This document shows, piece after piece, positions 13,375 to 45,024 of a DNA stretch of 62,655 bases. The stretch is from NCBI RefSeq assembly GCF_018977255.1, contig NW_024705204.1, positions 1 to 62,655 of the forward strand, in the 5' to 3' direction. This DNA is from Callorhinchus milii. Its lineage: Eukaryota. The notes under the pieces were generated by a model. The model searched no databases. It was not told the origin of the DNA and was given only the letters and a program-made list of their open reading frames with translations. The position numbers were made by a program, and so were the translations under genes. Every line of letters begins with the position of its first letter. The first letter of the stretch is position 1.

Positions 13375-13812
13375 CTATGGAAAGAAAATCTCTATTCACA
13401 CAATTTAATTCCTAAAATCACAAGAGATTTGAATCTTCCACTCATTGCATCTCATTTTTCCACCTTACTTACTCTACTATTTTATCATTAGAGCATCGCG
13501 TGGTTTCTGAAATGAGTCCACTGTCTAAACCAACCAGTCTTCCTGGTACCCTTTTGAGATGTAATTACCTTTTGAGGTTTAAGATATGTCTGGTGTCTGT
13601 TCTGAAAATGTTCTTCACATCCCTGAACTTACTGTCTTGAATGACTTAGCTCCCAGAGATATTTTGAAGGTTGAACAGCCCTAAAATATCCATTCATTCC
13701 TCCTAACTGCACATGACAACAACTCTCTGTAACAAGAGAACTGGGCTAGAAAGTAAAAATAGCTGTTTCTGGGAATTCCGTCCCACAATATATTCATCAT
13801 TCTCAATCTTAC

Positions 13813-14184
13813 CTGTATAGCAAACAAAACTGTATGACTGAAAGCAGTTTTCAGAAAACCACAGGCCTTTGTTGACTGCCACACAAATGAAATTAGATTG
13901 TTGATAAGCATTCTCCTGTTCCTTGTCCATCCAATGTTTGGAACTGAACTGATCTCCATTTGTCCACCTCCACCCGGCAACTGTACGGTTAACATTATGC
14001 AGCCCAATCCACAGAGGTGTATCTCCACCAGAGAGATGAAGAGTGATCTTTTGCTCTTCTGGGCTCCGAACGCTGACAAGATCCGTATAGTGAGTGCGGC
14101 AGTAATCCCAGGCAATGGTCCAGTTTTTCCGTCGGTCAATCCGATGATATTCTCTGTCCGCAGTTTTAATGCTTGGGAAATAAT
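13813..14184 (-). CDS. CTLD cassette exon I, 372 nt (missed as one ORF by the track)
   Basis: tctcttcccag acceptor; DYFPSIKTADREYHRIDRRKNWTIAWDYC...LWIGL...WMDKEQEN...C...GLWFSENC...VCYT; donor G|GTAAGA. Confidence 0.9.
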
Positions 14185-14859
14185 CTGGGAAGAGATCACA
14201 TCAAACAATCAGTTGAAGCTCCTCTGGCTCGGGTACCTCAACAAATCCATTTTGAGATCCTTTTCCTCACCTTCAAATCTTCCTTTCCTAACTATAAAAT
14301 GTCATCCAACCCTACTCTCCTGCACGCACCCAATTCACCATTGACTCTGGGCTACTGTTTTCATTGATTGATTTGATTTCTTTCTTTAGTGATCAGCCAC
14401 CAACCATTTCCTCTGGAACTCGCTTGCAAATTTTTGTTACGTTGCTCTATTTTCAACCCCCCGCCCCACTCCTCCTTCCCCCCACTCCTACCCCCCACAC
14501 CTCAAGTAGGCTGGACCAGTTACCATCTCCCATTTGGGTCAGAAGTTTGTCAGTTGGAACCTGATATTCTAGCTCAGGCGGACAATTCAGTGCAATGCTA
14601 ATAAACGCTTCATTTATCAAAGTTACCGTCCTTCAGATGATTAAACCAGGTCCGACTTTCCTGCACTTCAGTTGTTGGTAAAAATCCTGTGATACTTTTG
14701 GAAAAGAGAGATTTGCCCTTGCCAACAATTCTTCAGGAAATTGGTAATTTCATGTCTACCCGTGGGGACCTTGTTGTGCACAAATCGGCACAAACACAGT
14801 CGTCATTTTAACTGCAGATGATAGAATTACCTGCGAAGAGTTTGGAAAAGCTTTGGTCT

Positions 14860-15510
14860 CATCAGTTTTGTGACCAGGGTTCTCTCAGCCTCCTCGTCCT
14901 CCTTGACCTCTCTGCTGCTTTTGACACCGTAGACCACTCTATTCTCATCCACCGCCTCTCCTCTCATTGCAACCTCCACAGCGCTATTCTTGACTGGTTC
15001 AAATCGTACCTCTCACACGGCCTGCGCTTAATCTCCTCAAACGGCTTCTCCTCTAGCCCCCGGACCGCTTCATGTGGCGTTCCTCAGGGCTCTGTCCTTG
15101 GTCCCCTCTTCTTCAATATCTATCTGCTCACTCTTGGTGGCATCATCCGCAGATATGGAGTCAACTTCCACATGTATGTGGATGGCGCCAAACTCTACAT
15201 TTCTGCCTCAATCTTTGACTCCAGGACCCGCTGCTGTGCTGACAGAATGTCTCTCAGACATCAAGTTCTGGATGAGAGCCAACTTTCTTCAGCTGAACAA
15301 CAAAAAAACGAGGCTCTCCAGATTGACTCCCGTCAGCGCCTCCACCCTCCTCCTTGCTAAGCCAGTCCAGAACCTTGGGGTCTTGTTTGACCCTCAACTA
15401 TCCTTTCTATCCCACATCTGCGCCATGACCCGCTCTGCCTTACCCTACCTCCACAATGTCGCCCGACTACAGTTCAAGCTCCTGGTCCTTACCTTGAAGG
15501 CCCTCCACGG
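14860..15510 (+). mobile_element. Older L2 RT fragment
   Basis: [16 protein letters not shown]...[10 protein letters not shown]...FHMYVDG. Confidence 0.9.
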
Positions 15511-15519
15511 TCTTGCTCC

Positions 15520-18500
15520 AGTCGGGGAGCGGCGGCAGGACAGCGCGGGGAGGAGCCTGGGCCTACTGACCCAGGTACTTAAACTCGACGCCGGAGCGAG
15601 TTCAGCCCCGGGGGCGGGGGAGGGGGAGGTGTGGGAGCGGAGCGGAGGAACTGCTGACGTCATAGATTAGTTTTCAGGGGCGTGCGCGCGCAAAAAAAAA
15701 AAAAAAAAAAAACCTCTGCGCGCCCCCACCCTCCAGGGCTCACATCAGAGCCCACTATGGTCCTGTTGGGTTCGCTGCCCCAATCTACGGGATAATGCCA
15801 TCCACCTGACCGCTCCCGGTCCCCGCGTGCGCACTATGGCTGCCGCTTTGACCCGAGCCCCCTCACCTCCTCCCTCCTGCCCCCCTCCTCTCTCCCCCCA
15901 AACCCTCCCCTCTCTGCATCTCTCCCGCTCTCTCCTCCTCTCTCTCCGTCCCTCTCGTCTTCTATCCCCACTTGACCCTCCCACAACCTCCCTCTGCTCC
16001 AGCCTGGGAATCCTCCGCCGGGCTCACCGTAGCACTCAGCGTTGGCTGTCCAGCAGCAGCCACACCAACTGCCCCATTCCCCACTACACTCGCCAGCCAC
16101 CCCGGACACAGACCCGGGGAGTCAACCTCTCCTCCCTCATCCCCATTCCCCCCACCCCTGCCTCACAACCTGGAGCCCCCTCCCCTCCCACACACCCTTC
16201 TGTCAACCGCTCCCTCCACATCGGACTGCAAAATGTCCGCTCCCTCTGCAACAAGGCCCTGGTCATCAACGATCTCATCCTTGATGAGAACGTTGATATC
16301 ATGGCCTTAACAGAAACCTGGCTCACCCCAGGCGACACCTTCCCCCTCACGGAGGCCACACCACCCGGCTACACCTCCCACCACATCCCCCACCCCAACC
16401 GCCGTGGCGGTGGTGTTACCCTTATCTCAAGGACACCACTTGCCCTATCTCCTTACTCCTCTGGCTCTTTCCCCTCCTTTGAGCACCTCACCCTCTCCCA
16501 CCCCTCATTCCTCTCCCTTAAAATCCTCCTCCTCTACCGGCCCCTAAAACCTCTCCCACCTTCATCTCTGACATTTCAACACTCCTCACATCTCTTTGCC
16601 TCTGCTCTGATCGCCTCATCATCCTGGGCGACTTTAACCTACACTTCACCCCCTCCTGCTCCATCTCCACAGACTTCTCTTCCCTGCTCTCCTCACTCAA
16701 CCTTTCCCTACACATAAACTCCCCCACTCACAGTCACGGCCACCCACTCGATTTGGTGATCACCCGGGGCCTCAGTGTCTCGGATGTCACTATTACCGAC
16801 AAGGCCATCTCTGACCACTACTTCATCTCCTTCACCACCTCCACCCCCCTCCCCACCTCCACCAGACCCACCACCATCTTCTACCGCCCTTGGAAGAAGT
16901 TACCCCCACAATCCCTAACCGATGCCTTGGAGTCCTCTGAACTCCTCTCCCTCTGGCCTTCAACCCTCACCGACCCCTCTTCTCCTCTCTCCCTCCTCCA
17001 CAATACCCTCTCCTCCACACTCGATACTCTTGCCCCCATCACTTCCCGCACTGTCTCCTACTCCCGCTCCTCCCCCTGGTACACCACCCACCTCCGCTCA
17101 CTGAAAAGCCAGGTGCGGGCTGCTGAACGCACCTGTGTCAAATCTGGCCTAACGGTCCACCGACAAATCTGGCTGGACCTCCTCAAAATTTACCGCTCCA
17201 CTCTAGCCTCGGCCAAGTCGTCCTTCTACTCCAGGATAATCCTGGAGGCGAAGAACAACCCCAGGCTACTGTTTTCCACCATAACCCGACTCCTCCGTCC
17301 CCCCCGCCACCCCGCGCAGGTCATCTCCTCCAACCTTCACTGCGAGGAGATGCTGGATTTCCTTGAATCCAAGATCAAGGGAATCCGCTCCGCGGTCACT
17401 TCCCCTCCAACTTCCACCAACCCCCCACCCCCTCACTCCCACACTCCGACTCCTACCCATCCTCCCCTACACACCTTCGTACCCGTTTCCCCACCCTCTG
17501 TCACTGAACTCATCCTATCCCTAAAACCAACCACCTGCTCCCTTGACCCCATCCCCACTCCACTCCTTATCTCCCAGCTCCACTTTCTTGCCCCACATAT
17601 CACTGACATCATCAACCTGTCCCTCTCCTCTGGCTCTGTCCCCATTCCCTTAAAAACTGCCATCATCACGCCCACCCTGAAAAAACCCTCCCTTGATGCG
17701 TCGCAGCTATCAAGCTACCGGCCCATCTCCAACCTCCCCTTTCTCTCCAAGGTCTTGGAAAGAGTTGTCGCCTCCCAACTGCGCTCTTTCCTTTCCACCC
17801 ATTCTCTTTTCGAACCCCTTCAGTCAGGTTTCCGTGCTGCCCATAGCACAGAAACTGCCCTGGTCAAGGTCACCAATGATATCCTGACCATCTGTGACCA
17901 GGGCTCCCTCTGTCTCCTCGTCCTCCTCGACCTATCGGCAGCATTCGATACGGTCGACCACGCTATCCTACTCCACCGCTTGTCCTCCCACCTCAACCTT
18001 CAAGGCACTGTCCTTGAATGGTTTAGGTCGTACCTTTCTCACCGTCTTCACTTTGTCTCGACGAATGGCTTCTCCTCCACCCCCCGTACTGTCTCATGTG
18101 GTGTCCCTCAGGGCTCTGTCCTCGGTCCCCTCCTCTTCACCCTCTATATGCTCCCCCTTGGTGACATCATCCGCAGACATGGAGTTAACTTCCACATGTA
18201 TGCGGATGACACCCAACTCTACCTTTCCTCCTCTACTCTCAACTCCACGACCACCGATGTCCTGACAGCTGCCTGTCCGACATCGAGTCCTGGACGAGAG
18301 ACAACTTTCTTCAGCTCAACGTGCGAAAAACCGAGGCCCTCCTGATTGGCTCACGTCAGCGCCTCCGCACCTCAGGCGCTGACACCATCAGCATCCAAGG
18401 CTGCACTCTCCACCTCTCAAAGCCAGTCAGGAACCTCGGCGTTTTGTTCGACCCTGAGCTGTCCTTTCTCCCTCACATCCGCACCACAACTGGCACCGCC

Positions 18501-19277
18501 TTCCATCACCTCCGGAACATCGCCAGACTACGGCACTACCTCACCCCTCACGCTGCTGAAACCCTGGTCCACGCCTTTGTCACCTCAAGGCTGGACTATG
18601 GGAACTCTCTCCTCGCCGGCCTTCCCGGCACCTCCCTCCACAAGCTGCAGGTCATTCAGAACTCTGCAGCTCGTGTACTGTCCCGCACCAGACACCGCGA
18701 CCACATCACTCCCACCCTCGCTCGCCTCCACTGGCTCCCCATCCCCCAGAGGATTGATTTCAAGATCCTCATCCTCACCTACAAGGCCATTCACGGCCTC
18801 GCTCCCTCCTACCTCTCCAACCTACTATCCCCCTACCTACCTGCCCGTACCCTCCGTTCCTCCGGCTCCGGTCTGCTCCACGTCCCCCGCCCCAATCGCC
18901 CTACCATTGGTGGTCGGGCCTTCAGCCCCGAGGCTCTGGAACTCTATCCCCCAGTGCCTTCGCCGCTTCCTCCCTCTCCTCCTTCAAGGCCGGTCTCAAA
19001 ACCTTCCTCTTTGACTGAGCCTTCAGCTCCCCTCTCGACTCTCTTCCCCCTTCTCGCTCCCTCCCATCCCTCCCCTCACCCTGACCATTTCCCTCCTCCT
19101 CGCTCCCTCCCCTCCCCTCACCTTGACCATTTCCCTCCTCCTCGCTCCCTCCCCTCCCCTCACCTTGACCATTTCCCCCCCCGCTCGGGTCATGACCCAA
19201 CTGTGCAGCGTCTTGGGACGTCCTCCTGACGTGAAAGGCGCTTTATAAATGGAATCTTGTTGTTGTTGTTGTTGTTG
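15520..19277 (+). mobile_element. Near full-length L2-clade LINE (APE endonuclease + reverse transcriptase, frameshifted)
   Basis: GLQNVRSL...MALTETWL...GGGV (endonuclease); [17 protein letters not shown]...[38 protein letters not shown] (RT). GC-rich 5' end, (TTG)n tail at 19256-19277. Frameshifts near 16540, 18270 and 18930. Confidence 0.93.
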
Positions 19278-19545
19278 CTCTCACCTACCTCTCGGTCCTC
19301 TTAACACCCTCCGGCCCGCTTCACGTATTCTGCCTCACTCGCCCCACTATTGGCGGTGGACCTTCCGCCACTCTGCCTCCACCCTCTGGAACTCCATCCC
19401 GCAGGCCCTCCGTCTCGCCCCTCCCTCGCCACCTTCAAGACCCACCTCAAGACTCTCCTCTTTGACCGTGCTCTCGATCTTCCTGCTTCCCCCCCTGCCT
19501 TCCACCCTCGATCACAACACCAAAGATTTCACTCCCTGATCTTAC

Positions 19546-19911
19546 CTTCGTAGCAAGTGAACCAGTGTGTTTGGTTGCAGTAATCACCAAACCACAAACC
19601 ATTGCTCATAGCGACACATGTCCTGGAACCTGGGGATGTATTCATCTTCTTATCTCTCCAATGGGTGTAGTTGAACCTGTCTCCATTTACCCACTTCCAA
19701 CCATCAGCAGTTTGATTAATGTTGTACAGCCCAATCCAGAGAGGATGATCTCCATCAAAGAGCTTAGACATCAGGCTATGCTCTTCTGGGCTCCCAATAC
19801 TAATAAGATCAGTGTGATAATTTTGACAGTAATCTCGGGCTTCACTCCAGTTTTTTCGTCGGTCAACCCGATAATACTCTCTGTCTGCTGGTTTTGAGCT
19901 TCTCGACAGAT
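19546..19911 (-). CDS. CTLD cassette exon H, 366 nt, KMN at the EPN position
   Basis: ctcttttgctag acceptor; KNWSEARDYC...LWIGL...WRDKKMN...C...GLWFGDYC...TCYE; donor G|GTAAGA. Confidence 0.9.
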
Positions 19912-20447
19912 CTAGCAAAAGAGAGATACAGAAAATATTTGCAAGCTCCAACACTCCCAGGGAATCACGTTTAAGTTTCTTGTCCTTAACCCTGTGTCGT
20001 TTTGGTCAGACGGGTGTCTGAAACCGAATCAGAAACCCATTATCGTGCTTAAGATTCTCCAAACCAAGCTGAGAATTCCATGCATCCCATCTTTTCATGG
20101 AACTCCCAGAGATAGATTAATGGGACGCACACACTGTCACTCTTTCCTGGAGGGATGAAAGCTGCTTACCAAATTCCAGATAGTGATAGGCGCAGGTTGG
20201 CAAGGTCCAAGGGCTCGGGTAGTAAATGCTGGAGCCTACTCAGTTCAAGCTGCATCGCTTGCCATGGATGATCCTGTCTGGCAAGCTTACCCACTGTTTA
20301 TCCAGCCACCAGCCCCCTCCCCACCCCCCAACCCCCCGCACCCCCCCACACCTCCCACACCCAAGATTCTTCTGGTTATAGTCTATTGCTTATTTTTATT
20401 TCCACTTTCACTCCCATCCAGCTCGGCATCTTATTCCCAGATCTTAC

Positions 20448-20798
20448 CTTTGTAGCAAGTGAAAAGATAACTTTCATTGCAGTAATCACTGAACCACTGA
20501 CCATTTCTCACAGCGACACAGATCACAGAGTCCAGATAATCATTTGGCTCTTTATCTTTCCACTGCGTATAATTAAACTCGTCCCCACTTATCCATTTCC
20601 ACCCGGTAGTGGACACTTTATTATTGTACAGCCCGAGCCAGAGAGGTTCATCTCCAACAAATAGCTGAGATGTGAGCCTGTGCTCTTCCCAGCTACGAAT
20701 ACTGGTAAGACTTGTGTAATGGGTGCGGCAGTAATCCTGAGCTTCAGTCCAGTTTTTCCTTTGTTCAATCCGGTGATACTGTCTGTCCGTGGCCAGAT
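20448..20798 (-). CDS. CTLD cassette exon G, 351 nt, EPN motif
   Basis: cttttcgccag acceptor; KNWTEAQDYC...LWLGL...WKDKEPNDY...C...GQWFSDYC...TCYK; donor G|GTAAGA. Confidence 0.9.
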
Positions 20799-21994
20799 CT
20801 GGCGAAAAGTTAACAGCAGAAAATAAGGTCAAGGCTCCACTTATTTGTTTCGCCAATCCGATCAACATTGCTTGGCCTTATATTCCAATAACCTTACTGT
20901 TTCTTTTTTCACTACTTATAAAATCTCGTCCATTTTTTTCTCCTGTTCTTACAGCCCTATGCTTATAATTCTGGTCTAGTACCAGATCATCTGTATCTTA
21001 ATCCTGAGCCTTGTTGGGAGGTGCTGCCCAGCCCATCCCCCAGGCTATATCAATCTCCTTGACACATTTATCTTGAATGGAAGCAATTACAACAGCAACA
21101 ACAACTTACATTTATTTAGCACCCTTCACACACAGTAGTGTCCACTAAATAAATTCTTCATTAAACTCTTCAGATAAATTGTGTGCATCTGTATTGTTAG
21201 AAAGCCCCAACTGATTTTTGACTGAATTCAACTTTCTTCTTCTGAAACCTTCACTATTTTAAGACAAAATAACCTACCATTGCTAATTCTTGGGTCACAC
21301 TGGAATGTTCCAACTGCAATTATTAATTGTTTCCTGACTAATATATGATTAGAAACAAGGGGAGTTAAGGAGAATTGTTTTGACACAGCGAGTTGTTTGG
21401 ATCGGGAATGCACTGCCTGAAAGGGTGTTGGAAGCAATTTGGACAACTGTCAAGAGAAAAGTGGATAGATATTTGGGGAGAACAAATTTGCAAGCGTATG
21501 GGAAGAGGGCAGGGGACTGGGAATTATTTGTATAGCTCTTTCAAGAGCTGTCAAGGATACAAGGTGCCGAATGGCCTCCTTCTGTGCTGCATAATTCTAT
21601 GATTCTATGACGAACATTTGTGATTGAGAAAAAATCAGCCAGTTACAACTACTGGCTCACCGATTCTTTCCTGCTCTGCACCTGCACACATAACGTTCTA
21701 CATTTTGCTCATAAACTATGCAGACAAATTCACTTCGCATTATATTCTGTGAAGCGCTTCATGACGTCTCGAAGACGTGATAAGGCGCTATGTCAAATGC
21801 AAGTGTTGCTATTTTGCATGCAGTCCAAATGGCTAGCTTGTGATTATGTTTTGTTGTCAACAATATATTCAAGATCTTTTACTCGAAAGTATCTAAACAG
21901 CCACAGTAATGTCTATGTGTAACTGGGTCCCCATTTTTAATTTTGGAAATACTTATCGTGACTTATTGTGTATCGATATAAAGAGCCGATAGCT

Positions 21995-22745
21995 CAATCT
22001 ACACAACAACAACAACAAGGTTCCATTTATTGAGCGCCTTTCACGTCGGGAGGATGTCCCAAGGCGCTGTACAGTTGGGTCAGGACCCGAGCAGGGGGGG
22101 AAATGGTCAGGGTGAAGGGAGGGAAGGGAGGGAGCGAGGAGGGGGTAGAGAGTCGAGAGGAGAGCTGAAGGCACGGTTGAAGAGAAAGGTCTTGAGACCG
22201 GCCTTGAAGGAGGAAAGGGAGGAAGCGGCGAAGGCACTGGGGAATAGAGTTCCAGAGCCTCGGGGCTGAGATGCTGAAGGCCCGGCAACCGATGGTAGGG
22301 CGATTGGGGCGGGGGATGTGGAGCAGATCGGAGCCAGAGGAACGGAGGGTAGGTAGGGGGATAGTAGGTTGGAGAGGTAGGAGGGAGCAAGGCCGTGAAT
22401 GGCCTTGTAGGTGAGGATGAGGAACTTGAATTCGATCCTCTGGGGGATGGGGAGCCAGTGGAGGGGAGCGAGGGTGAGTGAGGGTGGGAGTGATGTGGTC
22501 CCGAAGCCTGGTGCGGGACAGTACACGAGCTGCAGAGTTCTGAATGACCTACAGTGTGGAGGGAGGTGGCGGGAAGGCCGGCGAGGAGAGAGTTCCCATA
22601 GTCCAGCCTTGAGGTGACAAAGGCGTGGACCAGGGTTTCAGCAGCGTGAGGGGTGAGGTAATGCCGTAGTCTGGCGATGTTCCGGAGGTGATGGAAGGCG
22701 GTGCCAGTTGTGGTGCGGATATGGGGGAGAAAGGACAGCTCAGGG
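21995..22745 (-). mobile_element. L2 3' fragment
   Basis: LHWLPIPQRIEFKFLILTYKAIHGLAPSYL and a (TTG)n tail. Similar L2 3' pieces at about 1-185, 10000-10200, 10590-11210, 25560-26080, 27750-28860, 39400-39790, 40420-41190, 42260-42565, 42730-42930, 52420-52895 and 62100-62310. Confidence 0.9.
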
Positions 22746-22882
22746 TCGAACAGAATAGAGTTCAGCTCTACTCATACTCAATTCAGCTGAGTAGCTCAGT
22801 CGCTTCCTTCTGTTTGGCAATTGGTGTAACTGTGGGAAAAGGCAAGTTTGCCACTCTTCAAAATCGCATGTCCTTGTCTTAC

Positions 22883-23245
22883 CTTTGTAGCAAATGAAAC
22901 GATAAGTTTGATTGCAGTAATTATCAAGCCACAGACCATTGCTCATAGTGACACAAATCACAGAAGACACAGAATCATTTGGCTCTTCTTGCCAATGGGT
23001 GTAATTGAACGTGTCTCCATTTGTCCATTTCCACCCAGCGTTCGACCCATTATTATAGTACAGCCCAATCCAAAGAGGGGTGTCGAGGTCAAGCATCTGA
23101 GATGTGAACCTGTGCTTCTCTGGATTCCGGCTGCTGACAAAATCACTGTGTTGATTGCGGCAGTAATCCCCATCTTCTGTCCAGCTTTTCTGCTTGTTGA
23201 TATGTAGGTATTCTCTGTACCAGGGCTTATCAACTTGAGACACAT
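22883..23245 (-). CDS. CTLD cassette exon F, 363 nt, EPN motif
   Basis: tttaatcag acceptor; KSWTEDGDYC...LWIGL...WQEEPNDS...C...GLWLDNYC...ICYK; donor G|GTAAGA. Confidence 0.9.
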
Positions 23246-23858
23246 CTGATTAAATAAAACGATAATAACATACTGTCAATTCACTGTATTCAAGTATTTT
23301 GTGAGCAAAATGTGGTGGCCAATTGCATACGGCAGTATCCCACAAACAGTCGTGAATTGAGTGACCAAGTTAGCATTAGTTTTTTTAAGAGATTAAAACC
23401 CCCCCATCCCGTAAAGTGATTCGCCAATCGTCGAATGATTGGGTTCTTACTTATGCTCGCCAATCAGAGGCATGTGGAATAAGAAAAGTTTCCCAACATT
23501 TCGCCTTGCCCGGGAACTGAATCCAGGTTTACTCACTTGATAGGTGACTTACCTAACCACTAACCTATCGGACTCCACAAAGACTCAGCAGCCTCTTAGG
23601 AAAATAATTAAATTGAAATTCAGAATAAAGGCCCCCAGTAGCTCAACCAATTGACTCTTCAGATCCTTGTCCTCCACTTCAAGCACATTCTCGTCTGGTC
23701 TCTAGCAAATTATACCCTACACCACTCCTCCTGCCGGGATGTTCTGCCCTTCTTATTTACTTTTCACCTTTATTCTTTCCATCTCATCAATGAAACAAGG
23801 AAGCAAACAACTCATGTAGTTTTAAATTCCTTAAATGCTTGTGATTTCCCGATCTTAC

Positions 23859-24218
23859 CTTTGTAGCAAGTAAACTGGTAAGTTTGATTGCAGTCATTAT
23901 TAAGCCACAGAGCGTTGGTCACAGCAACGCAGGTGCTACCCAGATTATCTGGCTCTGCATGTTTCCAGTCATCATTATTGAAACTGTCTCCATTTATCCA
24001 CTTCCACCCTGCAGTGGAGCTCTTATTATTGTACAGTCCAATCCAGAGAGGCGCACCTCTGCTAAACAGCTTGGAAGTCCTCTTCTGCTCCTCTGGGTTC
24101 CTAAAGCTGGTAAGGTCTGTGTAGAAATTACGGCAGTGATCACGGGCTTCACTCCAGCTTTTCTTTTGGTTAACCCTGTGATATGTTCTGTCTTGTGGCT
24201 TTGTGCTCATAGACGGAT
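23859..24218 (-). CDS. CTLD cassette exon E, 360 nt, EPD motif
   Basis: ctcttgttag acceptor; KSWSEARDHC...LWIGL...WKHAEPDN...C...LWLNNDC...TCYK; donor G|GTAAGA. Confidence 0.9.
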
Positions 24219-24749
24219 CTAACAAGAGATGATCAAATCAGAAAATAGGCTCAAGATTAAATGGTTTCCATTTCTTCCAAGGCACTAGGTTTTGAGGATG
24301 AGGGGAGGAGGAAGGAAGGAATTTCATCTTTTGTTCATATCTTGTTTTGCCTCCATAATATACAGTCACTACACTTCGCAGTACATTCTGTGAAGCGATT
24401 TGAGACATCTCAATGACATGATAAAATGCTATATTAAATGCAAGGATTATTATATTATTAGAGTACAACTGGTTAGCAAATTGAAAATCTTATCAAAGCA
24501 ACAATCAGTACAGTAGATTTTGTCTTTCCTAGACCAAGTATTACGCATGTTTATTGAGCCTCACATATTAATAACACTGAAACTGGAACAGAGAAAATAT
24601 TTGGAGAAAAAGATTTCTCCAGGGTGAGGATAAATAGCAGGAAATTTGGACTAAGAGGCATTGCAGGAGGCTTCATGGCTTGAATCTGTAATTGATGTGA
24701 TTTAAGAAAGGGAAGCACTCATGCTTAGCATATTAATCGCTGATCTTAC

Positions 24750-25115
24750 CTTGGTAGCAAATGAACCAGTATGTTCGTTTGCAGTCATCATTAAACCACA
24801 CGCCACTCTTCATCGCGACACAGACCTCAGAACCGAGATGTGCATTCAGCTCATTATCTTTCCAGTGTGCGTAACTGAACTCGTCTTCGTTTATCCACTT
24901 CCACCCAGCAGTAGTGTGGTTACTGTTGTAAAGGCCAATCCAGAGAGGTTTGTCTCCATCGAACATCTTAGATATAATCTTCTGCTCCTCAGCGCTCCGA
25001 ACACTGATAAGATCCATGTAATGATTGCGGCAGTAATCCCGCGCTTCAGTCCAGTTTTTGCGTTGATCTATCCAGTAATAATCTCTGTGCGCTGGTTTTG
25101 TGGTTGTGGACAGAG
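24750..25115 (-). CDS. CTLD cassette exon D, 366 nt, ELN motif
   Basis: ctcaccag acceptor; KNWTEARDYC...LWIGL...WKDNELN...C...GVWFNDDC...ICYQ; donor G|GTAAGA. Confidence 0.9.
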
Positions 25116-27359: not shown

Positions 27360-27713
27360 CTTTGTAGCACATGAACCAATATGTCTGATTGCAATAATCA
27401 TCGAACCACATGCCATTGGTCACAGCCACACAGATCATGGCACCTCGGTATCCATTAGGCTCCTTTTCTTTCCAGTGTGTATAATTGAACTTGTCTCCAT
27501 TTAACCACTTCCATCCTGTTTCAGAGTGGTTACTATTATATAGCCCGATCCAAAAAGCAATGTTTCTGTCAAACATTGAAGTGAAGATCTTCTGCTCCTC
27601 TGGGTTCCGGATGCTGACCAGATCGATGTGGTGTTTGCGGCAGTAATCCCGTGCTTCAAACCATCTTTTCTTTTTGTAGATCAGGTGATACCCTCTATCT
27701 GGGGAATTCATTT
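27360..27713 (-). CDS. CTLD cassette exon C, 354 nt, EPN motif
   Basis: ctctcaccag acceptor; RWFEARDYC...FWIGL...WKEKEPNGY...C...GMWFDDYC...MCYK; donor G|GTAAGA. Confidence 0.9.
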
Positions 27714-29165
27714 CTGGTGAGAGAAGGTAACATTGGGAAGTGAGATGTCCAAATTCGACTTACACCCAGTCTCAAATAGGACTGGCTCATCAAATCCATT
27801 TAAGACCTCATCCCTCCCAGTGCACTGCATATTCTTCCAAAACTTTAGAGGGCCCATACTCTCATCTTTTCTATTCAAGATCAATCCTTCCTTCCATTGC
27901 CACCATCAACTATTCAGTTCCATGATCGTCCCATTCATAGATCCCAATCCAAGATCTTCTTCCATGCATTATAAAACATTCTGGCTCCACCTTTGAGTCC
28001 AGAACTACTTCTGTCCTGAAAGAATGTCTCTCAGACATCAAGTCCTGGATCAACTAACTTTCTTCAGTTGAACGTCAACAAGATTGGTTGGTTCCCATCA
28101 GTGCCTGATGGCATCACCATCAATGGTTGCGCATTCCACCTTAATCAGCCAGTCAAGAACCTTAGCGTCTTTTGACCTCAACTACCCTTTCTACCCTACA
28201 TTCGTGCCATGACCCGCTCTGCCTTCTCCCATTGCCCGACTCTGCCCACTCTCTCATGTAGTAGGGCACCGAAACCCCCATACACGCCTTCATAATATCC
28301 CGGCTTCACAATGCAAAAATCCTGCCTGTCGGCATCCCCAACTCCTCCATCCATAGACTTCAAATCATCCAGAACTCTGTAACTGGTGTCCTCTCCCACA
28401 CCAGGCCCTGTGACCCTATCACTCGCATCCTCGCCCCATCCCACTGGCTTCCCAACTCACACAGGATACAGTTCAAGATCCTGGTCCTTACCATCAAAGC
28501 GCTTTATGGCCTTGCTCCCCCTACCTCTGCAACCTCCTAACCCCCTACTAACCTGAGCACTCCCTCTGCTCAGCATGCTTCAGCTTTTTCACGTTCCCCA
28601 ACCTTGACCGCTCTACCATTATTGGTCGAGCCTTCAATCATTCTACCCCCGCCTTCTGGAACTGCTTCCCACAATCACTCCGCCTCGCTCCTCCCTTGCC
28701 TCTACCTTCAAGACCCATCTTAAGACCCCCCCCTCTTCGACCGTGCCTTCGATCACCCTCCTTTCCCCCCTGCCTCCCCGATCCCAACCCCCAGCTTGGG
28801 TCGAAAACATTGAATATCTAATGCCTTGGGACATCATCCTGACGTGAAATGCGCAATGCAGATGTGTTTTTGTTTTTGGTAGTTGTGGGACTTGGATTTT
28901 GGTCAATGTTTCTTCATCTTCATTGACTATTGCTTTCCAATATGACTAAGAATCTAAGAAAGGATCATTTCTCTGTGACATTAACAGGTGTGAAGTGTGC
29001 TATATAAATGCAAGTTCTTGTTCGTTATGCACGAGGGAGCGTTTGGAAATGTCTGCTATTGTTAATATGGAGGGCAAGACTGTGTCGCATTTTATAATGT
29101 CTGAAACATGTCCTTACGTTCCATGGAATAAAACAAGGTGGGATTTTTCAAATCTGGGCGAATTC

Positions 29166-29240
29166 CTGTTGCAAGAGGACTTACAGGCTTCAGAGATATT
29201 GGCAATCGCTCACTGAAAGTGGAAGAATCTTCTATGACTT
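29166..29240 (-). CDS. Possible short linker exon
   Basis: Strong acceptor ttttttccctctctcctcag; EVIEDSSTFSERLPISLKPVSPLAT ends GCAACAG like the other linkers but is followed by GA rather than GT. An internal GTAAGT (exon end 29185) would give phase 0. Confidence 0.4.
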
Positions 29241-29539
29241 CTGAGGAGAGAGGGAAAAAATAATGCCATCAATACTGATCTGATATTCTTATTAGTACAG
29301 GAAAGAAGGAAGGAAAACAGGAAAGAAAAACATTGATATGTTTTTTATCACCTTATTACATGATTGCACTTGTCACTGAAGTGATCGATGAGTAAACTCT
29401 AATAACTGCCTCTTTGACTTTGCCTATAATTATCTTCCCCTTTCTCGCTCCCCTCTCTATTTTCCCTGACTCCCTCATTCTGAAGGAAGGTAAATAAATG
29501 CAAGTTGATGTTGCTGTGATAATTTGGAATTGAATGCAT

Positions 29540-29696
29540 ATATCTAATGTACGAATCTGTGCTTCTCCGGGCTCCTAATGCTTATAATATTTGTATAATA
29601 ACTGACAATATATATATATATTGACTTCAGCCCAGTTGTTCCTGAGATTAATCCGGTGATATTCTCTGGCCATGGATTCAGTTCTCTTGAGACCAT
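29540..29696 (-). pseudogene. 5' half of a CTLD pseudo-exon
   Basis: ttttttgacag acceptor; DGLKRTESMAREYHRINLRNNWAEV, an (AT)n run, YC, then frameshifted TNIISIRSPEKHRF; remainder missing. Left boundary approximate. Confidence 0.7.
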
Positions 29697-29818
29697 CTGT
29701 CAAAAAACGATTGCATATGAAATAGATTCAAATCTCAATGCCTCCCAGCACAGCAGCAGCTGGAGTTTAAGATCTGTGGCAATGCAGCGATTCGCTGTCC
29801 TGAGAAATAAGTCCATAC

Positions 29819-29932
29819 CTTCTATGGAATTATTTTGAGTGATTGTAAGATCCAAAATTGTGTGTTGATTTTTTTCTGTAGGTCGTGGCGAGGAAGGTGT
29901 TGGTTCACGGGCAATTGCAGATTCACGAAGTT
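29819..29932 (-). CDS. Pro/Ser/Thr-rich stalk exon, 114 nt, phase 1-1
   Basis: ttttctttgtctctccacag acceptor; ELRESAIAREPTPSSPRPTEKNQHTILDLTITQNNSIE; donor G|GTATGG. Confidence 0.7.
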
Positions 29933-30252
29933 CTGTGGAGAGACAAAGAAAATAACATATTTTATTGCTGATTTGTCAATCTGTTTGGTTTATAACCTGC
30001 TGTCTATCAAACTCTCACATTCTACATGCTTAAGATATGAACAGAATCCCAGAAACAGGACGGTGATGGACTAACGATTGGCATTCCACCTGAAAACAGC
30101 AGATGAACCATGTCTCTTGTTGTGACTCCAACATATACTCAATTATTTCACTGAATTGGATATGCCATTATAATTAACTTATCTAATTTGTTTTATGAAG
30201 ACAGCCTGCTGTTTTTGCAAAGGTATTGCGGAGAAGGGGAGAGAATAAAAAA

Positions 30253-30337
30253 GGAAGGAAGGAAGAAAGGAAGGAAGGAAGGAAGGAAGGAAGGAAGGAA
30301 GGAAGGAAGGAAGGAAGGAAGGAAGGAAGGAAGGAAA
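30253..30337 (+). repeat. (GGAA)n microsatellite
   Basis: Direct reading. Confidence 0.97.
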
Positions 30338-30589
30338 GAAATTTCTTCTGGAGTTCTCTGATAAAATCACGTACCCTTGCTTTATCTCTTCTTGTCTTCC
30401 AAATGATGCCATAAACCTGTCTGTTAGACTGTGCTTTTGGTTTGTATAATTGATGACCCTAGCTCTTGACTGCTCTCCGTAAGATCTGCAAAATGCTTTG
30501 AGAAACCCAGACTACAATAATGGCGCAATACATTTGTTGGTTAGTACAAATTGGGTGGAGATTTGTAACTATTACAATTTGTAATTGTA

Positions 30590-30917
30590 ATAATAATAGT
30601 AAAAATAATCCTTGCATTTGGTATAGCGCTTTTCACGTCGGGAGGACGTCCCAAAGTGCTTTACAGAACACACTGTAAAGCGAATTGACTGTATATTTGT
30701 GGGCGAACGCGGCAGCCAATTGCACACAGCAATGTCCCACAAACAGTAGATTGAAAATGACCAATTTATTATTGTTCTTTTTTGTTTTGGAGGGATTATT
30801 ATTAGGCTCTGTGTGGAGTAAGGAAACTTGCCCAAGGTTTCGCCCTCCGCCTGGGATTGAACTCGGGTCTCTCACTTGCAAAGCGAGTGCTCTAACCACT
30901 GAGCTACAGGACTCCAT
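30590..30917 (-). mobile_element. tRNA-derived SINE
   Basis: TAGCTCAGTGGTTAGAGC...GAGTTCAATCC head and (AAT)n tail. Confidence 0.9.
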
Positions 30918-31439
30918 TGTAATTATTAAGGGCCACTTAATGATTTATGGATTATGAAAAATAAGTTCTTGCCCTCCTCAGAATTGATTTTAGAGATGGG
31001 AAGCTGTAAAGGAGTACTTGGCATTTCTTCTGTTTTAAAAAGGATTCTGGGCTGTATCAATGTCAGTGTTAGCTCACTAGGAGTTGAAGATTTCTGAATG
31101 TCTGTCGAGACAGATGAAACATCACACCCATTGTATTTGACCTAATTCGATTTGTTTTATCAATTATTTCATAATACTAAACTTTCAGTTGCTATGTCGA
31201 CTCACGTTCAATGTTAAAAGATGGAAATCATAGCCACAAGTGAATGTGGAGGATACAATCTGCAAATTGTAATGGCTGTCTATTTTGTGGACTAAGTACG
31301 GCAACCAATCGCACACAGCAGTGTCCCACAAACAGTCGCGGAGTGAGTGAGTGACCAAATTATACATTTTTTGGAGGATGGTAATTTGAGAGGAACGAAG
31401 TAAAGTGTTTCATCTTTGCTCACAGAATCTCTGCTAAAT

Positions 31440-31757
31440 TGGACGAGATGCCAACAGACTCAGCTGTATAGACAACACAGATTAGGGCCCTGAGGTAATC
31501 ATTGGGCTCCATAAATTTCCAGTTTGTTTAATTGACCTTGTCGAAATTTGTTCACATCCAATGTTGATTGGATCGCTTATGATTGTACATCCCGATCCAG
31601 AGAGGCGTAGATCTGTCAATCAGCTCAGATATAAACTTGTTCTCCTCTGTGTCCCAAATACTAAGATCATGTAATCGCAACAGCAGAATTACAGTGCTCG
31701 AGTCCAGTTTATCTTTTGGTGGATGCTCTATCATTTGTTTACTTATCAAAGGCTCAT
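31440..31757 (-). pseudogene. CTLD pseudo-exon (frameshift, stops, 3' end lost)
   Basis: LWIGMYNHKRSNQHWM*TNFDKVN*TNWKFMEPNDYLRALICVV; acceptor atcag present, no donor seen. Left boundary approximate. Confidence 0.8.
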
Positions 31758-32087
31758 CTGATAATAAATCACATCAGAAAATAAGTTCAAGCTCCAGTTG
31801 TTTGAGTTGTTCAAGGCAGATCCAATCTAAGATCCTTACCAGCAAATTCCTTCTCAGAATTTATCGATATAAATTCTGCCTGCTCTAATCTGTAACTTTA
31901 TCTCTATCTTAAAATATTTCTGTTCAAATAGTATACCTCTTGGATAAAGGTTGCTATTGTTAATATTGAAGCGAACCCTATGTTTTAAATAAGTGTGTTT
32001 GAAATAAGTAATGTGAAAATACATCCGTATTTTATGATGCTCAAAAGAGCAGCGCAAAATCATGCTCAACTCTCTTCCCGATCTTAC

Positions 32088-32451
32088 CTTTCTGGCCCAT
32101 GAACTTGTATGTTTGATTGCGGAAATCATCAAACCACAGCCCATTGTGCACAGCCACACACATTGGAGAACTTAGGTTATCATTTGGTACCATAAATTTC
32201 TAGTGTGTATTATTTATTTGTTCTCCAGTTGTCTACATCCAGTTGGCTTTGGAGCCCTTTTTTATTGCAGAGCCCAATCCAGAAAGGCAAATATTTGTCA
32301 AACTTCTTGGAAATAAATCCGTCCTCATAGTTCTGAATGCTGATCAGATTTGTGTAGTGGATGCGGCAATAAATCAGGGCTTCAGTCCAGTTTTTCTCTT
32401 GATCAATCAGGTAACATATCCTGGTTACTGACTTATTCTTCACTGCAGGAT
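32088..32451 (-). pseudogene. CTLD pseudo-exon (frameshift, two Trp-to-stop changes) with intact AG/GT
   Basis: 364 nt. KNWTEALIYC...FWIGL, then a +1 frameshift, TAG at both W positions, VPND...CVAVHNGLWFDD, last two Cys lost; donor G|GTAAGA retained. Confidence 0.85.
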
Positions 32452-32839
32452 CTGATGAGAATCCATGAGACAAAGAGTCAGACTTCAGTGGAATTTGAGT
32501 AGATGTGAATCAGGTATAAGATACCTCTCCTTATTTCAAAACTTCAAACCCTATCCAATTTGACCACTCCCTTTCCCATGCAATATTCTGATTTTAATTT
32601 CAAACCCATCCCCTTCACTTTTCTGCTGTTGTCTTCTGCATGATGCTCACTTTGTCTTCCCACTCGCAGTGACACCTCCCTGGGCCATTAGGTCCTTATC
32701 CAATTGAACCATCCCAACAGTTTATTTTCCTTCATGCCCAACAAATTTGTCAGTTAAAGATTTTCTGCAAATAATGGGCTAATTCATCACTTGGGAATAC
32801 GTTGTTAGCTGATTCTGGGTTATTTTGAGAGTTGAAAAG

Positions 32840-32938
32840 TTTAAAAGTTGTGACGAGATCTTTCTTTGTTGCAATACCGTTTATATGGATTTGGGAGCTT
32901 GCCTGATGGTTCGCTGGGAGTTGCAGATATACGAAAGT
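32840..32938 (-). pseudogene. Decayed stalk exon with mutated acceptor (AG to AA)
   Basis: ACTTTCGTATATCTGCAACTCCCAGCGAACCATCA aligns with the start of the 29932 stalk exon (AACTTCGTGAATCTGCAATTGCCCGTGAACCAACA), but the acceptor reads cacAA. Left boundary approximate. Confidence 0.55.
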
Positions 32939-33160
32939 TTGTGAAAACAGACAGAACAAAATGCGTTCTTATTCGGTTGGGTATGCAACCAGGTTCTTCA
33001 ATTGGGTAATCCAGGATGCATATTTACTGTACCGAAGGGTGGAGGTGAATCAGATTCTGACTTCAATGATGGAGGTAAGTATTCTTCCCATTCAGCTGGG
33101 GGGTGGGGGGTCGCAGGTGAACCAAGTAGAAAATTGATAACTCTGGACAGAAGTTCTCAC

Positions 33161-33268
33161 CTGTTGCCAAATTAGTGTTATTCAGAGCTATGCCTGAAGC
33201 TTTTTCTATTGTGGAACAGATTGAGGCTTCTAAAGAGATCTGGCTGGAGAGTAAAGATTTCTTCTCAT
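33161..33268 (-). CDS. Stalk/linker exon, 108 nt, phase 1-1
   Basis: tctccacag acceptor; DEKKSLLSSQISLEASICSTIEKASGIALNNTNLAT; donor GCAACAG|GTGAGAA, identical to the donor of the 13.3 kb linker. Confidence 0.7.
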
Positions 33269-33666
33269 CTGTGGAGACACAGCCCGTACCATTATTTGCC
33301 TGGCGGTTTGCTTGGTATACTGTGCAGAGAGCGGGAGATGAAAAGAGAGACAAAGTGCGAAAGAAAAAGACGGTGATAATTCATCAGACCCATTGATCTG
33401 GATTTGTCCGCTAAATTCTCCTTCCCTTGTTATCTCAGTCTCTCCTTTTCTTCAAAGCCCTCTTAGAAAATTGCATTTTCCATCCTGTTTAGGTTTTCAC
33501 AATTGAATATCACTTTTATCATGTCTGCTTTCATTAACACCTATTGAAGGTTTCCAGATGCTCATCCCGTGTGAGAGGAATTATATTGGTCCAAGCATTT
33601 GGTATCATTGACAGACACAAATGAAGAGGTTGACATCGCACAGTGATTCGCTGGCACTGGTCTTAC

Positions 33667-33786
33667 CTGCTGGACTTCGTAACAGGGGATTCTTCCAAGC
33701 TGTGAGTGAAACTTTTTTGGATGGAAGCTTTGCAGGTCGTGGAGACCTGAACGTTGGATTCATAGGAGGGGAAAATCTCCGAAGGT
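33667..33786 (-). CDS. Pro/Ser/Thr-rich stalk exon, 120 nt, phase 1-1
   Basis: tttctttctgtctccatag acceptor; DLRRFSPPMNPTFRSPRPAKLPSKKVSLTAWKNPLLRSPA; donor G|GTAAGA. Confidence 0.7.
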
Positions 33787-34334: not shown

Positions 34335-34700
34335 CTTTGTAGCACATAGACTGGTATGTTTTATTGCAGTAGTCATCAAACCACAAGCCATTGATCACAG
34401 CGACACAGCTTTCAGAGTTAAGGTAATCATTTGGCTCCATATATTTCCACTGCGTATAATTGACCGCTTCTCCATTTGTCCACTTCCACGCGGCAGTGGA
34501 ACCCTTTTTACTGAACAGCCCGATCCAGAGAGTGCGATCTTCAACAATCAGCTGAGACATGTACTTGGCCTCCTCTGGACTCTGGATACTGACCAGATCT
34601 ACGTAGTGACTGCGGCAGTGATCCCGAGCTTCAGTCCAGTTTTTCAGTTGCTTGATTGGGTAATATTCTCTGTCCACAAATTTATTCTTCAAGGCCAAAA
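34335..34700 (-). CDS. CTLD cassette exon B, 366 nt, EPN motif
   Basis: ctag acceptor; KNWTEARDHC...LWIGL...WKYMEPNDY...C...GLWFDDYC...MCYK; donor G|GTAAGT. Confidence 0.9.
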
Positions 34701-36028: not shown

Positions 36029-36400
36029 CTTCATAGCAAATGAACAAATGTGTTTGATTGCAGTAAGCGGGAAACCACAGTCCATTGTTTATAGCCACAC
36101 AGATCCCAGAAGTTCGGTTACCATTCATCTTTTTATCTTTCCAGTGCATATGATTGAATGCATCGCCATTGGTCCATTGCCATTGCCATCCAACAGTGGT
36201 TAAATTTTTACTGTACAGCCCAATCCAATACGATACTCCATAATTGAGCAGACGGGCGGTTTCATAATTTTCCTTTGGGCTCCGGATGCTGACAAGATCC
36301 GTGTGGTGAGCGCGGCAGTAACCCCGGGCTTTTGCCCATTTTTTCTTTTCATTGACCGTGTGATACTTTCTGTCCAAGGATGGAACAATCTGGGGCAGAG
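36029..36400 (-). CDS. CTLD cassette exon A (first after leader), 372 nt, phase 1-1
   Basis: ttttccag acceptor; WAKARGYC...YWIGL...WKDKKMN...C...GLWFPAYC...FICYE; donor G|GTAAGA. Confidence 0.9.
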
Positions 36401-36917: not shown

Positions 36918-36963
36918 CTTGAGTAAGAAGGAGGAGGGGTAAGAAAACTCGCATTTTACTCAT
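36918..36963 (-). CDS. Signal-peptide (leader) exon of the multi-CTLD lectin gene
   Basis: MSKMRVFLPLLLLTQ then phase-1 donor G|GTGAGC; in frame with the first CTLD exon (ALPQIVPSLDRKYH...). Confidence 0.8.
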
Positions 36964-44986: not shown

Positions 44987-45024
44987 CACAGCAAAGGCAT
45001 CCCCGAGAGAACCGTACAAAAACT
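44987..45024 (+). promoter_or_regulatory. RSS of V1 (22-bp spacer)
   Basis: CACAGCA + 22 nt + ACAAAAACT. Confidence 0.85.

What the first reader, a model, noticed from the sequence alone, without database searches (positions are those of the whole stretch)
29540..32951. Dead cassettes in the middle of a live array
Seen: three CTLD pseudo-exons and one acceptor-less stalk are clustered between intact exons. The 32088-32451 exon has stops and a frameshift yet keeps AG and G|GTAAGA. Inference: constitutive inclusion would truncate everything downstream, yet eight downstream cassettes are intact, so this exon is skipped (exon-level birth and death), or a hidden gene boundary lies here.
Basis: partly seen in the sequence, partly recalled or inferred. 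Interest (0 to 1): 0.72.

Follow-up and report, generated by a model that had tools for sequence, protein, structure and literature searches.

The report
Dead lectin exons inside live gene
An elephant-shark gene for a secreted protein with ten C-type lectin domains has three decayed lectin exons and a decayed linker exon in its middle, and it reads from start to stop only if they are spliced out. This is a clean but ordinary case of exon death in a repeat-domain gene.

Summary
On the minus strand lie three decayed C-type lectin (CTLD) exons: p32 at 32451-32088, p31 at 31757-31414 and p29 at 29696-~29480. With them is a decayed linker exon, st32 at 32938-32809. p32 has one frameshift, two TGG>TAG stops and two lost cysteines. 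It keeps an acceptor and a G|GTAAGA donor that score as well as those of live exons.

The window is Callorhinchus milii. The array is most likely one ~30-kb gene. There is one leader (ATG 36963), ten intact phase-1/phase-1 CTLD exons, linker exons, and a two-exon tail ending at TAA 6765-6763. The tail was found here by homology. Any splice path that omits the four dead elements gives one ORF of 1,320-1,569 codons. Including any one of them gives an early stop.

Each dead CTLD has an intact counterpart in sister arrays of the same genome, so these are copy-specific exon deaths. No recent exon birth was seen. No second leader or tail supports a hidden gene boundary.

Skipping itself is inferred, not shown. 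One all-GT-AG Ensembl model even joins p32's donor to p31's acceptor.

The closest precedent is KIR pseudoexon 3. Interest is modest.

The parts
36918..36963 (-). Leader exon. It encodes MSKMRVFLPLLLLTQ from ATG 36963 and has a phase-1 donor CAAG|gtgagc.
   Evidence: Sequence. 67% identical, 5'UTR included, to the leader of sister-array model P0153. It starts the long ORF. No similar copy lies elsewhere in the array.
36029..36400 (-). Intact CTLD exon c36 (372 nt, phase 1-1).
   Evidence: Pfam Lectin_C, E 4e-16. It is the counterpart of domain 1 of P0012.
34335..34700 (-). Intact CTLD exon c34 (366 nt, phase 1-1).
   Evidence: It is the counterpart of domain 2 of P0012/P0151.
33667..33786 (-). 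Linker (stalk) exon S1a, 120 nt, open, AG/GT intact.
   Evidence: 56% identical to the linker between domains 2 and 3 of RefSeq model P0151.
33161..33319 (-). Candidate linker exon S2, 159 nt, open, AG/GT intact. No homologue was found.
   Evidence: It is supported only by the excess of open phase-1 AG..GT candidates on this strand (14 against 2 on the other strand and 1.35 in shuffles).
32809..32938 (-). Dead linker exon st32: acceptor AG>AA, internal frameshift, donor GT>CT.
   Evidence: Alignment with the three other S1-type exons. It matches the P0153 linker in two frames.
32088..32451 (-). Dead CTLD exon p32 (364 nt). It has a +1 shift, two TGG>TAG stops and two cysteines lost. AG and G|GTAAGA are kept.
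   Evidence: Intact counterparts are in P0151, P0153, P0012 and P0061.
31414..31757 (-). Dead CTLD exon p31 (344 nt). It has stops, frame shifts, a scrambled 3' end and donor GT>AT. The acceptor is kept.
   Evidence: 73% identical over 64 codons to an intact CTLD of P0153.
30973..31101 (-). Linker exon st31, 129 nt, open, with acceptor AG and donor G|GCAAGA (a GC donor).
   Evidence: 81% identical over all 43 codons to a linker of P0153. Frame check.
30076..30089 (-). A 14-nt micro-exon used only by the public model P0126 (cag|...|gttagt). Its status is unknown.
   Evidence: Exact threading of P0126 on the window with all GT-AG introns.
29819..29932 (-). Linker exon st29, 114 nt, open, AG/GT intact.
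   Evidence: It is an S1-type exon, homologous to st32, S1a and S1d.
29480..29696 (-). Dead CTLD remnant p29. Only the 5' third remains, with a shift at an (AT)n run and a stop. There is no 3' half and no donor. The acceptor is kept.
   Evidence: It groups with the intact first domain of P0009 (85/91 support). 10 of 30 residues are unique to this lineage.
29118..29240 (-). Candidate linker exon e29240, 123 nt, open, AG/GT intact.
   Evidence: It is used by model P0126. No homologue was found elsewhere.
27360..27713 (-). Intact CTLD exon c27, the first live cassette after the dead zone.
   Evidence: Lectin_C, E 1e-20. It is the counterpart of domain 2 of P0009.
12416..25115 (-). Seven further intact CTLD exons: c24 25115-24750, c23 24218-23859, c22 23245-22883, c20 20798-20448, c19 19911-19546, c13 14184-13813 and c12 12778-12416. 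Linker S1d lies at 13374-13261.
   Evidence: dN/dS among the live exons has a median of 0.31.
6763..7789 (-). C-terminal tail. Exon T1 is 7789-7716 and exon T2 is 6858-6763, ending in TAA 6765-6763.
   Evidence: Homology to the tail of RefSeq model P0154 (59% and 41%). Splice sites and frame.

Best explanation
The region is the middle of one ~30-kb gene of the elephant shark. The gene encodes a secreted protein built from tandem single-exon C-type lectin domains and short Pro/Ser/Thr-rich linker exons.

In this copy of the gene, three lectin exons (p32, p31, p29) and one linker exon (st32) stopped being part of the coding message and have decayed. This happened after the whole array was duplicated.

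Every cassette starts and ends in phase 1. The spliceosome can therefore join an upstream donor (33161, 33667 or 34335) to a downstream acceptor (31101, 29932, 29240 or 27713) without breaking the frame. That transcript encodes a 1,320-1,569-residue protein with ten lectin domains.

Transcripts that still take in p32 would carry an early stop with many junctions downstream. By the usual rule they would be removed by nonsense-mediated decay.

Shown here:
- the lesions;
- the single leader and single tail;
- the open frame of every skipping path;
- intact counterparts of the dead exons in sister arrays;
- long-term purifying selection on the live exons.

Inferred: that the dead exons are actually skipped, which junctions are used, and how p32 is avoided despite its good splice sites.
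For: 1. Ten intact phase-1/1 CTLD exons carry conserved AG and G|GTAAG-type sites (c12: G|GTAGGA).
2. There is one leader, homologous to the leader of a sister array, and one two-exon tail, homologous to the tail of RefSeq model P0154. Neither occurs anywhere else in the array.
3. All five tested paths without the dead elements are open from ATG 36963 to TAA 6765-6763 (1,320-1,569 codons). Including st32, p32, p31 or p29 stops translation after 386-475 codons, with 12-15 junctions downstream.
4. Taking p32's three frame-breaking lesions in 364 nt as a clock, about 24 such lesions are expected in the eight downstream exons if they were neutral. None is seen (P 4e-11). At least 12 disabling lesions all fall in 22.5% of the CTLD/linker sequence (P 2e-8).
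5. dN/dS among the live exons is 0.18-0.50, median 0.31.
6. p32, p31 and p29 each have an intact counterpart in sister arrays of the same genome, in the same order.
7. The family architecture in skate and shark RefSeq models is leader + single-exon CTLDs alternating with ~40-residue linker exons, with no membrane anchor.
8. Catshark RefSeq isoforms differ by exactly one CTLD (119 aa) or by one CTLD plus a linker (156 aa). Whole-cassette skipping is therefore annotated in this family.
9. A decayed CTLD lies in an intron of the Heptranchias RefSeq gene and is left out of its model.
Against: - No transcript data could be examined, so skipping is not shown.
- p32's acceptor and donor score like those of live exons. 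Nothing in the splice sites themselves explains exclusion.
- The public model P0126 joins p32's donor to p31's acceptor. It then passes through a 14-nt micro-exon to st29, e29240 and c27, all with GT-AG introns. If that model rests on RNA reads, p32 and part of p31 are at least sometimes included.
- No database searched holds a long protein model of this gene. Only short Ensembl fragments exist, several with implausible GC donors inside exons.
- S2, e29240 and e25562 have no homologues and may not be exons.
Confidence: 0.62

Rival explanations
1. This gene copy is failing. p32 is still spliced in constitutively because its splice sites are intact. The locus then yields only NMD-targeted messages, or a truncated two-lectin product. 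The sister arrays carry the function, and the downstream exons look intact only because too little time has passed.
For: - p32's splice-site scores equal those of live exons.
- Model P0126 uses p32's donor and p31's acceptor.
- p32 has hardly more lineage-specific changes than live exons, so it died recently.
- At least two sister arrays exist in the genome.
- No full-length model exists in public sets.
Against: - In the time p32 gained 3 frame-breaking lesions in 364 nt, the eight downstream exons (2,895 nt) gained none (P 4e-11; P 0.008 even at a five-fold lower rate).
- p31, p29 and st32 are much more decayed than p32, so the zone has been out of use for longer. Even so, leader, tail and all ten CTLDs stay open and in one frame.
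Confidence: 0.15
2. A hidden gene boundary. An upstream gene (leader, c36, c34, linkers) ends in the dead zone, and a second gene (c27 to tail) starts there from an unrecognised promoter and first exon.
For: - AATAAA hexamers lie at 32726 and 32266 on the coding strand.
- Public models of a sister array are also split into a 5' piece (P0153) and a 3' piece (P0154).
- The dead zone would be a natural place for a former junction.
Against: - No leader-like exon or leader homologue lies between 36.9 kb and 12 kb. The one spurious candidate lies in a SINE/low-complexity tail.
- No tail homologue lies near 33 kb.
- c27 begins in phase 1 behind a normal acceptor and has no start codon of its own.
- Seven hexamers in 6.6 kb is about the number I estimate from base composition (roughly 10).
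- The dead exons' counterparts in sister arrays are internal coding exons of single models, for example P0153: c34-type, linker, p32-type, p31-type, linkers.
- P0154 starts at an internal Met of a CTLD exon, so it is a truncated model and not a true gene start.
Confidence: 0.1
3. Artefact. The lesions are sequencing or assembly errors in an otherwise intact exon block.
For: The p32 frameshift lies in an A-run, a typical error site.
Against: There are at least 12 independent lesions of different kinds: substitutions to stop, cysteine losses, splice-site substitutions, multi-base deletions and a missing exon half. Ensembl-derived proteins carry the same altered residues, for example FRNQTYKFMGQK in P0126.
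Confidence: 0.02

Closest known systems
KIR pseudoexon 3 (human lineage III killer-cell Ig-like receptor genes)
   Same: An exon encoding a whole extracellular domain remains in the gene but is not incorporated into mRNA. The neighbouring exons stay in frame. Related genes keep a functional version of the exon, which shows that the shorter receptor came from a longer one (PMC3504360, citing Vilches et al. 2000).
   Different: The domain here is a C-type lectin, not Ig. Here several adjacent cassettes and a linker are dead, with stops and frameshifts. Exclusion from mRNA is documented for KIR but only inferred here.
Cartilaginous-fish secreted poly-CTLD genes annotated 'macrophage mannose receptor 1-like' or 'C-type mannose receptor 2-like' (Leucoraja XP_055486625, Heptranchias XP_067829860, Scyliorhinus isoforms)
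   Same: - A leader followed directly by tandem CTLDs, each in one ~350-370-nt exon, alternating with ~40-residue linker exons, and no membrane anchor.
- Isoforms that differ by whole cassettes.
- A decayed CTLD in an intron of the Heptranchias gene.
   Different: Only about 40-45% identical to the window's domains. They have 4-6 CTLDs against ten live ones here. None of these has been characterised experimentally as far as my searches show.
Mannose receptor family (MRC1, MRC2/Endo180, PLA2R1, LY75/DEC-205)
   Same: Many CTLDs in tandem. These are the best-scoring solved structures when scores are summed over domains.
   Different: The window's gene has no ricin-type cysteine-rich domain, no fibronectin type II domain and no transmembrane segment. 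Its CTLDs are single exons with selectin-like compact length. A single domain scores no better against this family than against CD23, selectins or collectins (~53-57 bits).

Membership tests
C-type lectin-like domain (Pfam PF00059) | Profile match above the curated cut-off | tested here: met
   c27, c36 and c12 score 75, 60 and 63.5 bits against a cut-off of 22.6.
C-type lectin-like domain (Pfam PF00059) | Four conserved cysteines and the WIGL core motif | tested here: met
   Invariant C24, C94, C107, C115 and W-I/L-G-L in all ten live exons. p32 has lost two of the four cysteines.
C-type lectin-like domain, sugar-binding subtype | Ca2+/sugar site motifs EPN or QPD plus WND | tested here: inconclusive
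   EPN is present in c34, c27, c22 and c20 only. WND is replaced by W-F/L/V-x plus variable residues (mostly D/N) in all ten. Binding cannot be judged from sequence.
Mannose receptor family (CTLD group VI) | N-terminal ricin-type cysteine-rich domain and fibronectin type II domain | tested here: not met
   The leader splices straight onto the first CTLD. Homologous shark and skate proteins carry only PF00059, while true MRC1 hits carry PF00040, PF00652 or PF24562.
Mannose receptor family (CTLD group VI) | Transmembrane segment and cytoplasmic tail | tested here: not met
   The tail exons encode a hydrophilic Lys/Gln-rich end (...ANQKANPKGHVANPKLRMNMDYQEASSQNTPKRTN) with no hydrophobic stretch.
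Selectins | Single-exon CTLD followed by EGF and complement-control repeats and a membrane anchor | tested here: not met
   The single-exon CTLD is shared. No EGF or CCP exon follows, only further CTLDs and linkers.
Cartilaginous-fish secreted poly-CTLD family | Leader, tandem single-exon CTLDs, ~40-residue linker exons, no anchor | tested here: met
   The window's exon map compared with the exon maps of Leucoraja L001 and Heptranchias L002. Linker type D-L-R/K... is shared.
Pseudoexon within a functional multi-domain gene (KIR pseudoexon 3 type) | Domain exon homologous to functional exons, with a functional counterpart in related genes | tested here: met
   p32, p31 and p29 match intact domains of P0151, P0153, P0009 and P0162.
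Pseudoexon within a functional multi-domain gene (KIR pseudoexon 3 type) | The rest of the gene stays open and in frame when the exon is left out | tested here: met
   ORF of 1,320-1,569 codons for every skipping path.
Pseudoexon within a functional multi-domain gene (KIR pseudoexon 3 type) | The exon is absent from mature mRNA | not testable with these tools
   No transcript reads are available. The only hint, model P0126, points the other way for p32's donor and p31's acceptor.

The most novel reading that the evidence does not exclude
p32 is not simply skipped. It acts as a recently made 'poison' cassette: with splice sites as strong as those of live exons, it is included in part of the transcripts and sends them to nonsense-mediated decay. 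Output of the ten-lectin protein is then set by a splicing choice. More broadly, cassette choice in this frame-symmetric array would be regulated to vary the lectin's domain make-up.
Probability: 0.12. Interest if true: 0.55.

Novelty: new member of a known kind. Interest (0 to 1): 0.35.

Why it matters
It gives a dated, internally controlled example of how a repeat-domain gene loses domains. Exons that are frame-symmetric can drop out of the message and decay while the rest of the gene stays under selection, and sister copies in the same genome still show the ancestral state.

It also yields a full gene model: leader, ten lectin domains, linkers and tail over about 30 kb. Public annotation has only fragments of it.

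It also leaves a concrete splicing question. p32 has splice sites indistinguishable from those of its live neighbours, so something else must decide its fate.

The biology of this secreted poly-lectin family of cartilaginous fishes is unstudied. The finding itself does not open a new kind of mechanism.

Tried and rejected
- **DNA of the sister arrays.** Exact look-ups of P0012, P0009, P0151 and P0154 (and of the catshark protein P0002) found no contig. Comparisons with sister arrays therefore rest on protein models only. No dN/dS on the window lineage alone could be made.
- **A full-length annotated protein.** The exhaustive profile search, a 400-aa query and a 1,163-aa query found no long Callorhinchus protein of this family.
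- **Ensembl fragments as transcript evidence.** I rejected this for P0073, P0038, P0155 and P0160, which need GC donors inside CTLD exons. Only P0126 is fully GT-AG, and its basis is unknown.
- **A second leader.** No blastn similarity was found. The single signal-like candidate (30617-30548) lies in SINE/low-complexity sequence.
- **Poly(A) hexamers as a sign of a boundary.** Seven in 6.6 kb is about the number I estimate from base composition (roughly 10).
- **Candidate exon 8202-8119.** This came from my exon scan and was dropped once the true tail exons were found.
- **tRNA scan of the zone.** None was found, so the SINE head is not a called tRNA.
- **Literature.** There is no paper on elephant-shark multi-CTLD genes. 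A general pseudoexon search was unhelpful.
Full report
**What is there**

The window is from the elephant shark, Callorhinchus milii. Ensembl-derived UniRef proteins of that species are 97-100% identical to pieces of it.

I searched the window with the intact lectin exons as queries. This finds 13 C-type lectin domain (CTLD) segments, all on the minus strand between 36.4 and 12.4 kb. Ten are intact and three are decayed, at 32050-32464, 31462-31773 and 29520-29748 (E 2e-27, 7e-15, 9e-6).

In a DNA alignment all 13 share the acceptor AG. The ten intact exons are 351-372 nt, each a multiple of 3. They begin and end in phase 1 and have the near-invariant donor AAG|GTAAGA (c12: CAG|GTAGGA). Their translations match Pfam Lectin_C well above the cut-off and keep four cysteines and the WIGL core.

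**The dead elements**

- **p32 (32451-32088)** is 364 nt. Compared with its intact counterparts it has a one-base insertion in an A-run, two TGG>TAG stops, Cys>Arg and Cys>Gly at two of the four conserved cysteines, and EPN>VPN. In the real phase-1 frame it runs into TAA about 80 codons in.
- **p31 (31757-31414)** has at least three stops, frame shifts, an unalignable 3' end and a donor changed from GT to AT.
- **p29 (29696-~29480)** keeps only about the first 58 codons, with a shift at an (AT)n run and a stop. Its 3' half and donor are gone.
It belongs to a family of four homologous linker exons. In st32 the acceptor is AA instead of AG, the donor is CT instead of GT, and the frame shifts in the middle.

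It is open and 81% identical to a sister-array linker. Its donor is G|GCAAGA.

**Is it one gene?**

A leader exon (ATG 36963, MSKMRVFLPLLLLTQ, donor at 36918) precedes c36. It is homologous, 5'UTR included, to the leader of a sister-array model. It has no copy elsewhere in the array.

Using the C-terminus of the RefSeq model XP_007910316 (P0154) from a sister array, I found a two-exon tail downstream of c12. Exon T1 is 7789-7716 and exon T2 is 6858-6763, ending at TAA 6765-6763. Both have proper splice sites and the right phase. No tail-like sequence lies near the dead zone.

I joined the exons in silico. Every tested path that omits st32, p32, p31 and p29 is open from the ATG to that TAA, for 1,320 to 1,569 codons depending on which linkers are used. 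Including any one dead element stops translation after 386-475 codons, with 12-15 junctions still downstream.

A scan for open, phase-1, AG..GT segments gives 14 on this strand. The other strand gives 2, and shuffles give 1.35 on average. Most of the non-CTLD candidates are therefore probably real linker exons. S2, e29240 and e25562 have no homologues, however, and remain candidates.

**Are the live exons really under selection?**

Pairwise dN/dS among the ten live exons is 0.18-0.50, median 0.31, with dS of 0.66 or more. The exon duplications are thus old and have been constrained.

I then used p32 as an internal clock (3 frame-breaking lesions in 364 nt). If neutral, the eight downstream exons should carry about 24 such lesions. 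They carry none (P 4e-11; P 0.008 even at a fifth of that rate). All of at least 12 disabling lesions fall in the 22.5% of sequence that is dead (P 2e-8).

This excludes the idea that everything downstream of p32 has been untranslated since p32 broke.

**Where the dead exons came from**

The same genome holds at least two sister arrays. They are known here only through protein models (P0012, P0151, P0009, P0153, P0154, P0156, P0162 and others; 70-83% identical).

In a tree, c36, c34, c27, c24 and c23 each pair with one sister-array domain at 99-100% support. p32 pairs with intact domains of P0012 and P0061. p29 pairs with the intact first domain of P0009. p31 aligns at 73% over 64 codons with an intact domain that follows the p32-type domain in P0153. 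The order of domains is the same in the sister arrays.

The three dead exons were therefore ordinary coding exons of the ancestral gene and died in this copy only. There is no sign of recent exon birth.

Counting residues unique to each lineage gives 17/114 for p32. Live c34 has 14/122 and live c27 has 14/113. p29 has 10/30. So p32 died recently, and p29 (and by its state p31) died earlier.

That p32 'keeps AG and G|GTAAGA' needs no selection. Of the eight splice sites of the four dead elements, four are already lost.

**How it probably works**

Because all cassettes are phase 1-1, leaving out any block keeps the frame.

The family behaves this way elsewhere:
- Skate and shark RefSeq genes have the same layout of single-exon CTLDs and ~40-residue linker exons.
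- Catshark RefSeq isoforms differ by exactly one CTLD (119 aa) or one CTLD plus a linker (156 aa) and are otherwise 97-99.9% identical.
- The Heptranchias gene has a decayed CTLD in an intron that its model leaves out.

The most likely reading is that the productive message joins S2, S1a or c34 to st31, st29, e29240 or c27. Messages that take in p32 would be unproductive.

**What remains open**

Skipping is inferred, not seen. Matrices built from the live exons score p32's acceptor at 11.7 bits and its donor at 15.5 bits. The live range is 2.5-18.8 for acceptors and 6.7-15.3 for donors, so the splice sites do not explain exclusion.

One public model, P0126, threads exactly onto the window with only GT-AG introns. 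It runs p32 donor > p31 acceptor > a cryptic donor in p31 > a 14-nt micro-exon (30089-30076) > st29 > e29240 > c27. If it is RNA-based, p32 and part of p31 are sometimes included.

The other Ensembl fragments need GC donors inside exons and are not evidence. No database searched holds a long model of this gene.

A gene boundary is unlikely but not excluded. A failing gene copy is disfavoured by the lesion statistics.

**What it is called and what it is like**

The domains are generic CTLDs. Single domains score no better against mannose receptors than against CD23, selectins or collectins. The gene lacks the ricin-type domain, the FNII domain and the transmembrane segment that define the mannose receptor family, so the RefSeq name 'mannose receptor-like' used for its relatives describes only the tandem CTLDs.

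The closest precedent for the phenomenon is KIR pseudoexon 3. That is a domain exon left in the gene but not incorporated into mRNA, with functional versions in related genes (PMC3504360).

**Verdict**

This is a real and well-defined feature: copy-specific exon death inside an otherwise intact, selected, frame-symmetric poly-lectin gene. It is a new example of a known kind. Its main by-products are a complete gene model and a testable question about why p32 is, or is not, spliced in.

Noticed in passing
window 6763-7789 (-): Two-exon C-terminal tail of the lectin gene, about 4.6 kb beyond the last CTLD.
   Followed up: yes
window 6763-36963 (-): Public protein sets hold only short, partly implausible fragments of this gene (242-398 aa). 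The 1,320-1,569-codon model assembled here has no counterpart in the databases searched.
   Followed up: partly
window 14800-19300 (+): A long retroelement insertion, with long open reading frames rich in Pro/Ser and TE-typical motifs seen elsewhere in the window, fills the 5.4-kb intron between c19 and c13. A related fragment lies at 21956-22771 between c22 and c20.
   Followed up: no
window 30575-30954 (-): A SINE copy (the same element recurs at least 8 times in the window) sits about 55 nt downstream of the GC donor of linker exon st31. An (AAGG)22 microsatellite follows at 30251-30340.
   Followed up: partly
window 2187-2804 (-): An open reading frame with a rhodopsin-family 7TM match (Pfam 7tm_1, E 1e-9). 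It is probably part of a single-exon GPCR gene downstream of the lectin gene.
   Followed up: no
window 44600-62000, both strands: Several V-segment-like open frames with YYCA-type ends (YYCAL at 47.9-48.5 and 61.5-61.9 kb; YFCAL at 44.7-45.0 kb). This agrees with the scan's notes of a TCR V cluster head-to-head with the lectin gene.
   Followed up: no
L002:15120-15386 and L002:10327-10651, 4969-5337: Heptranchias perlo: decayed CTLD copies lie in an intron of, and upstream of, the RefSeq poly-CTLD gene XP_067829860. Dead cassettes therefore seem common in this family.
   Followed up: partly
window 36029-36400 (-): The first CTLD (c36) has a two-residue WQ insertion in the WxW motif and a much longer branch than its sister-array counterpart (0.40 against 0.055). 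It may be evolving fast.
   Followed up: no
all ten live CTLD exons: The mannose-type EPN motif is kept in only four domains (c34, c27, c22, c20), and the WND motif is altered at its Asn (W-F/L/V-x) in all ten. Classical Ca2+-dependent sugar binding is therefore doubtful for most domains.
   Followed up: no
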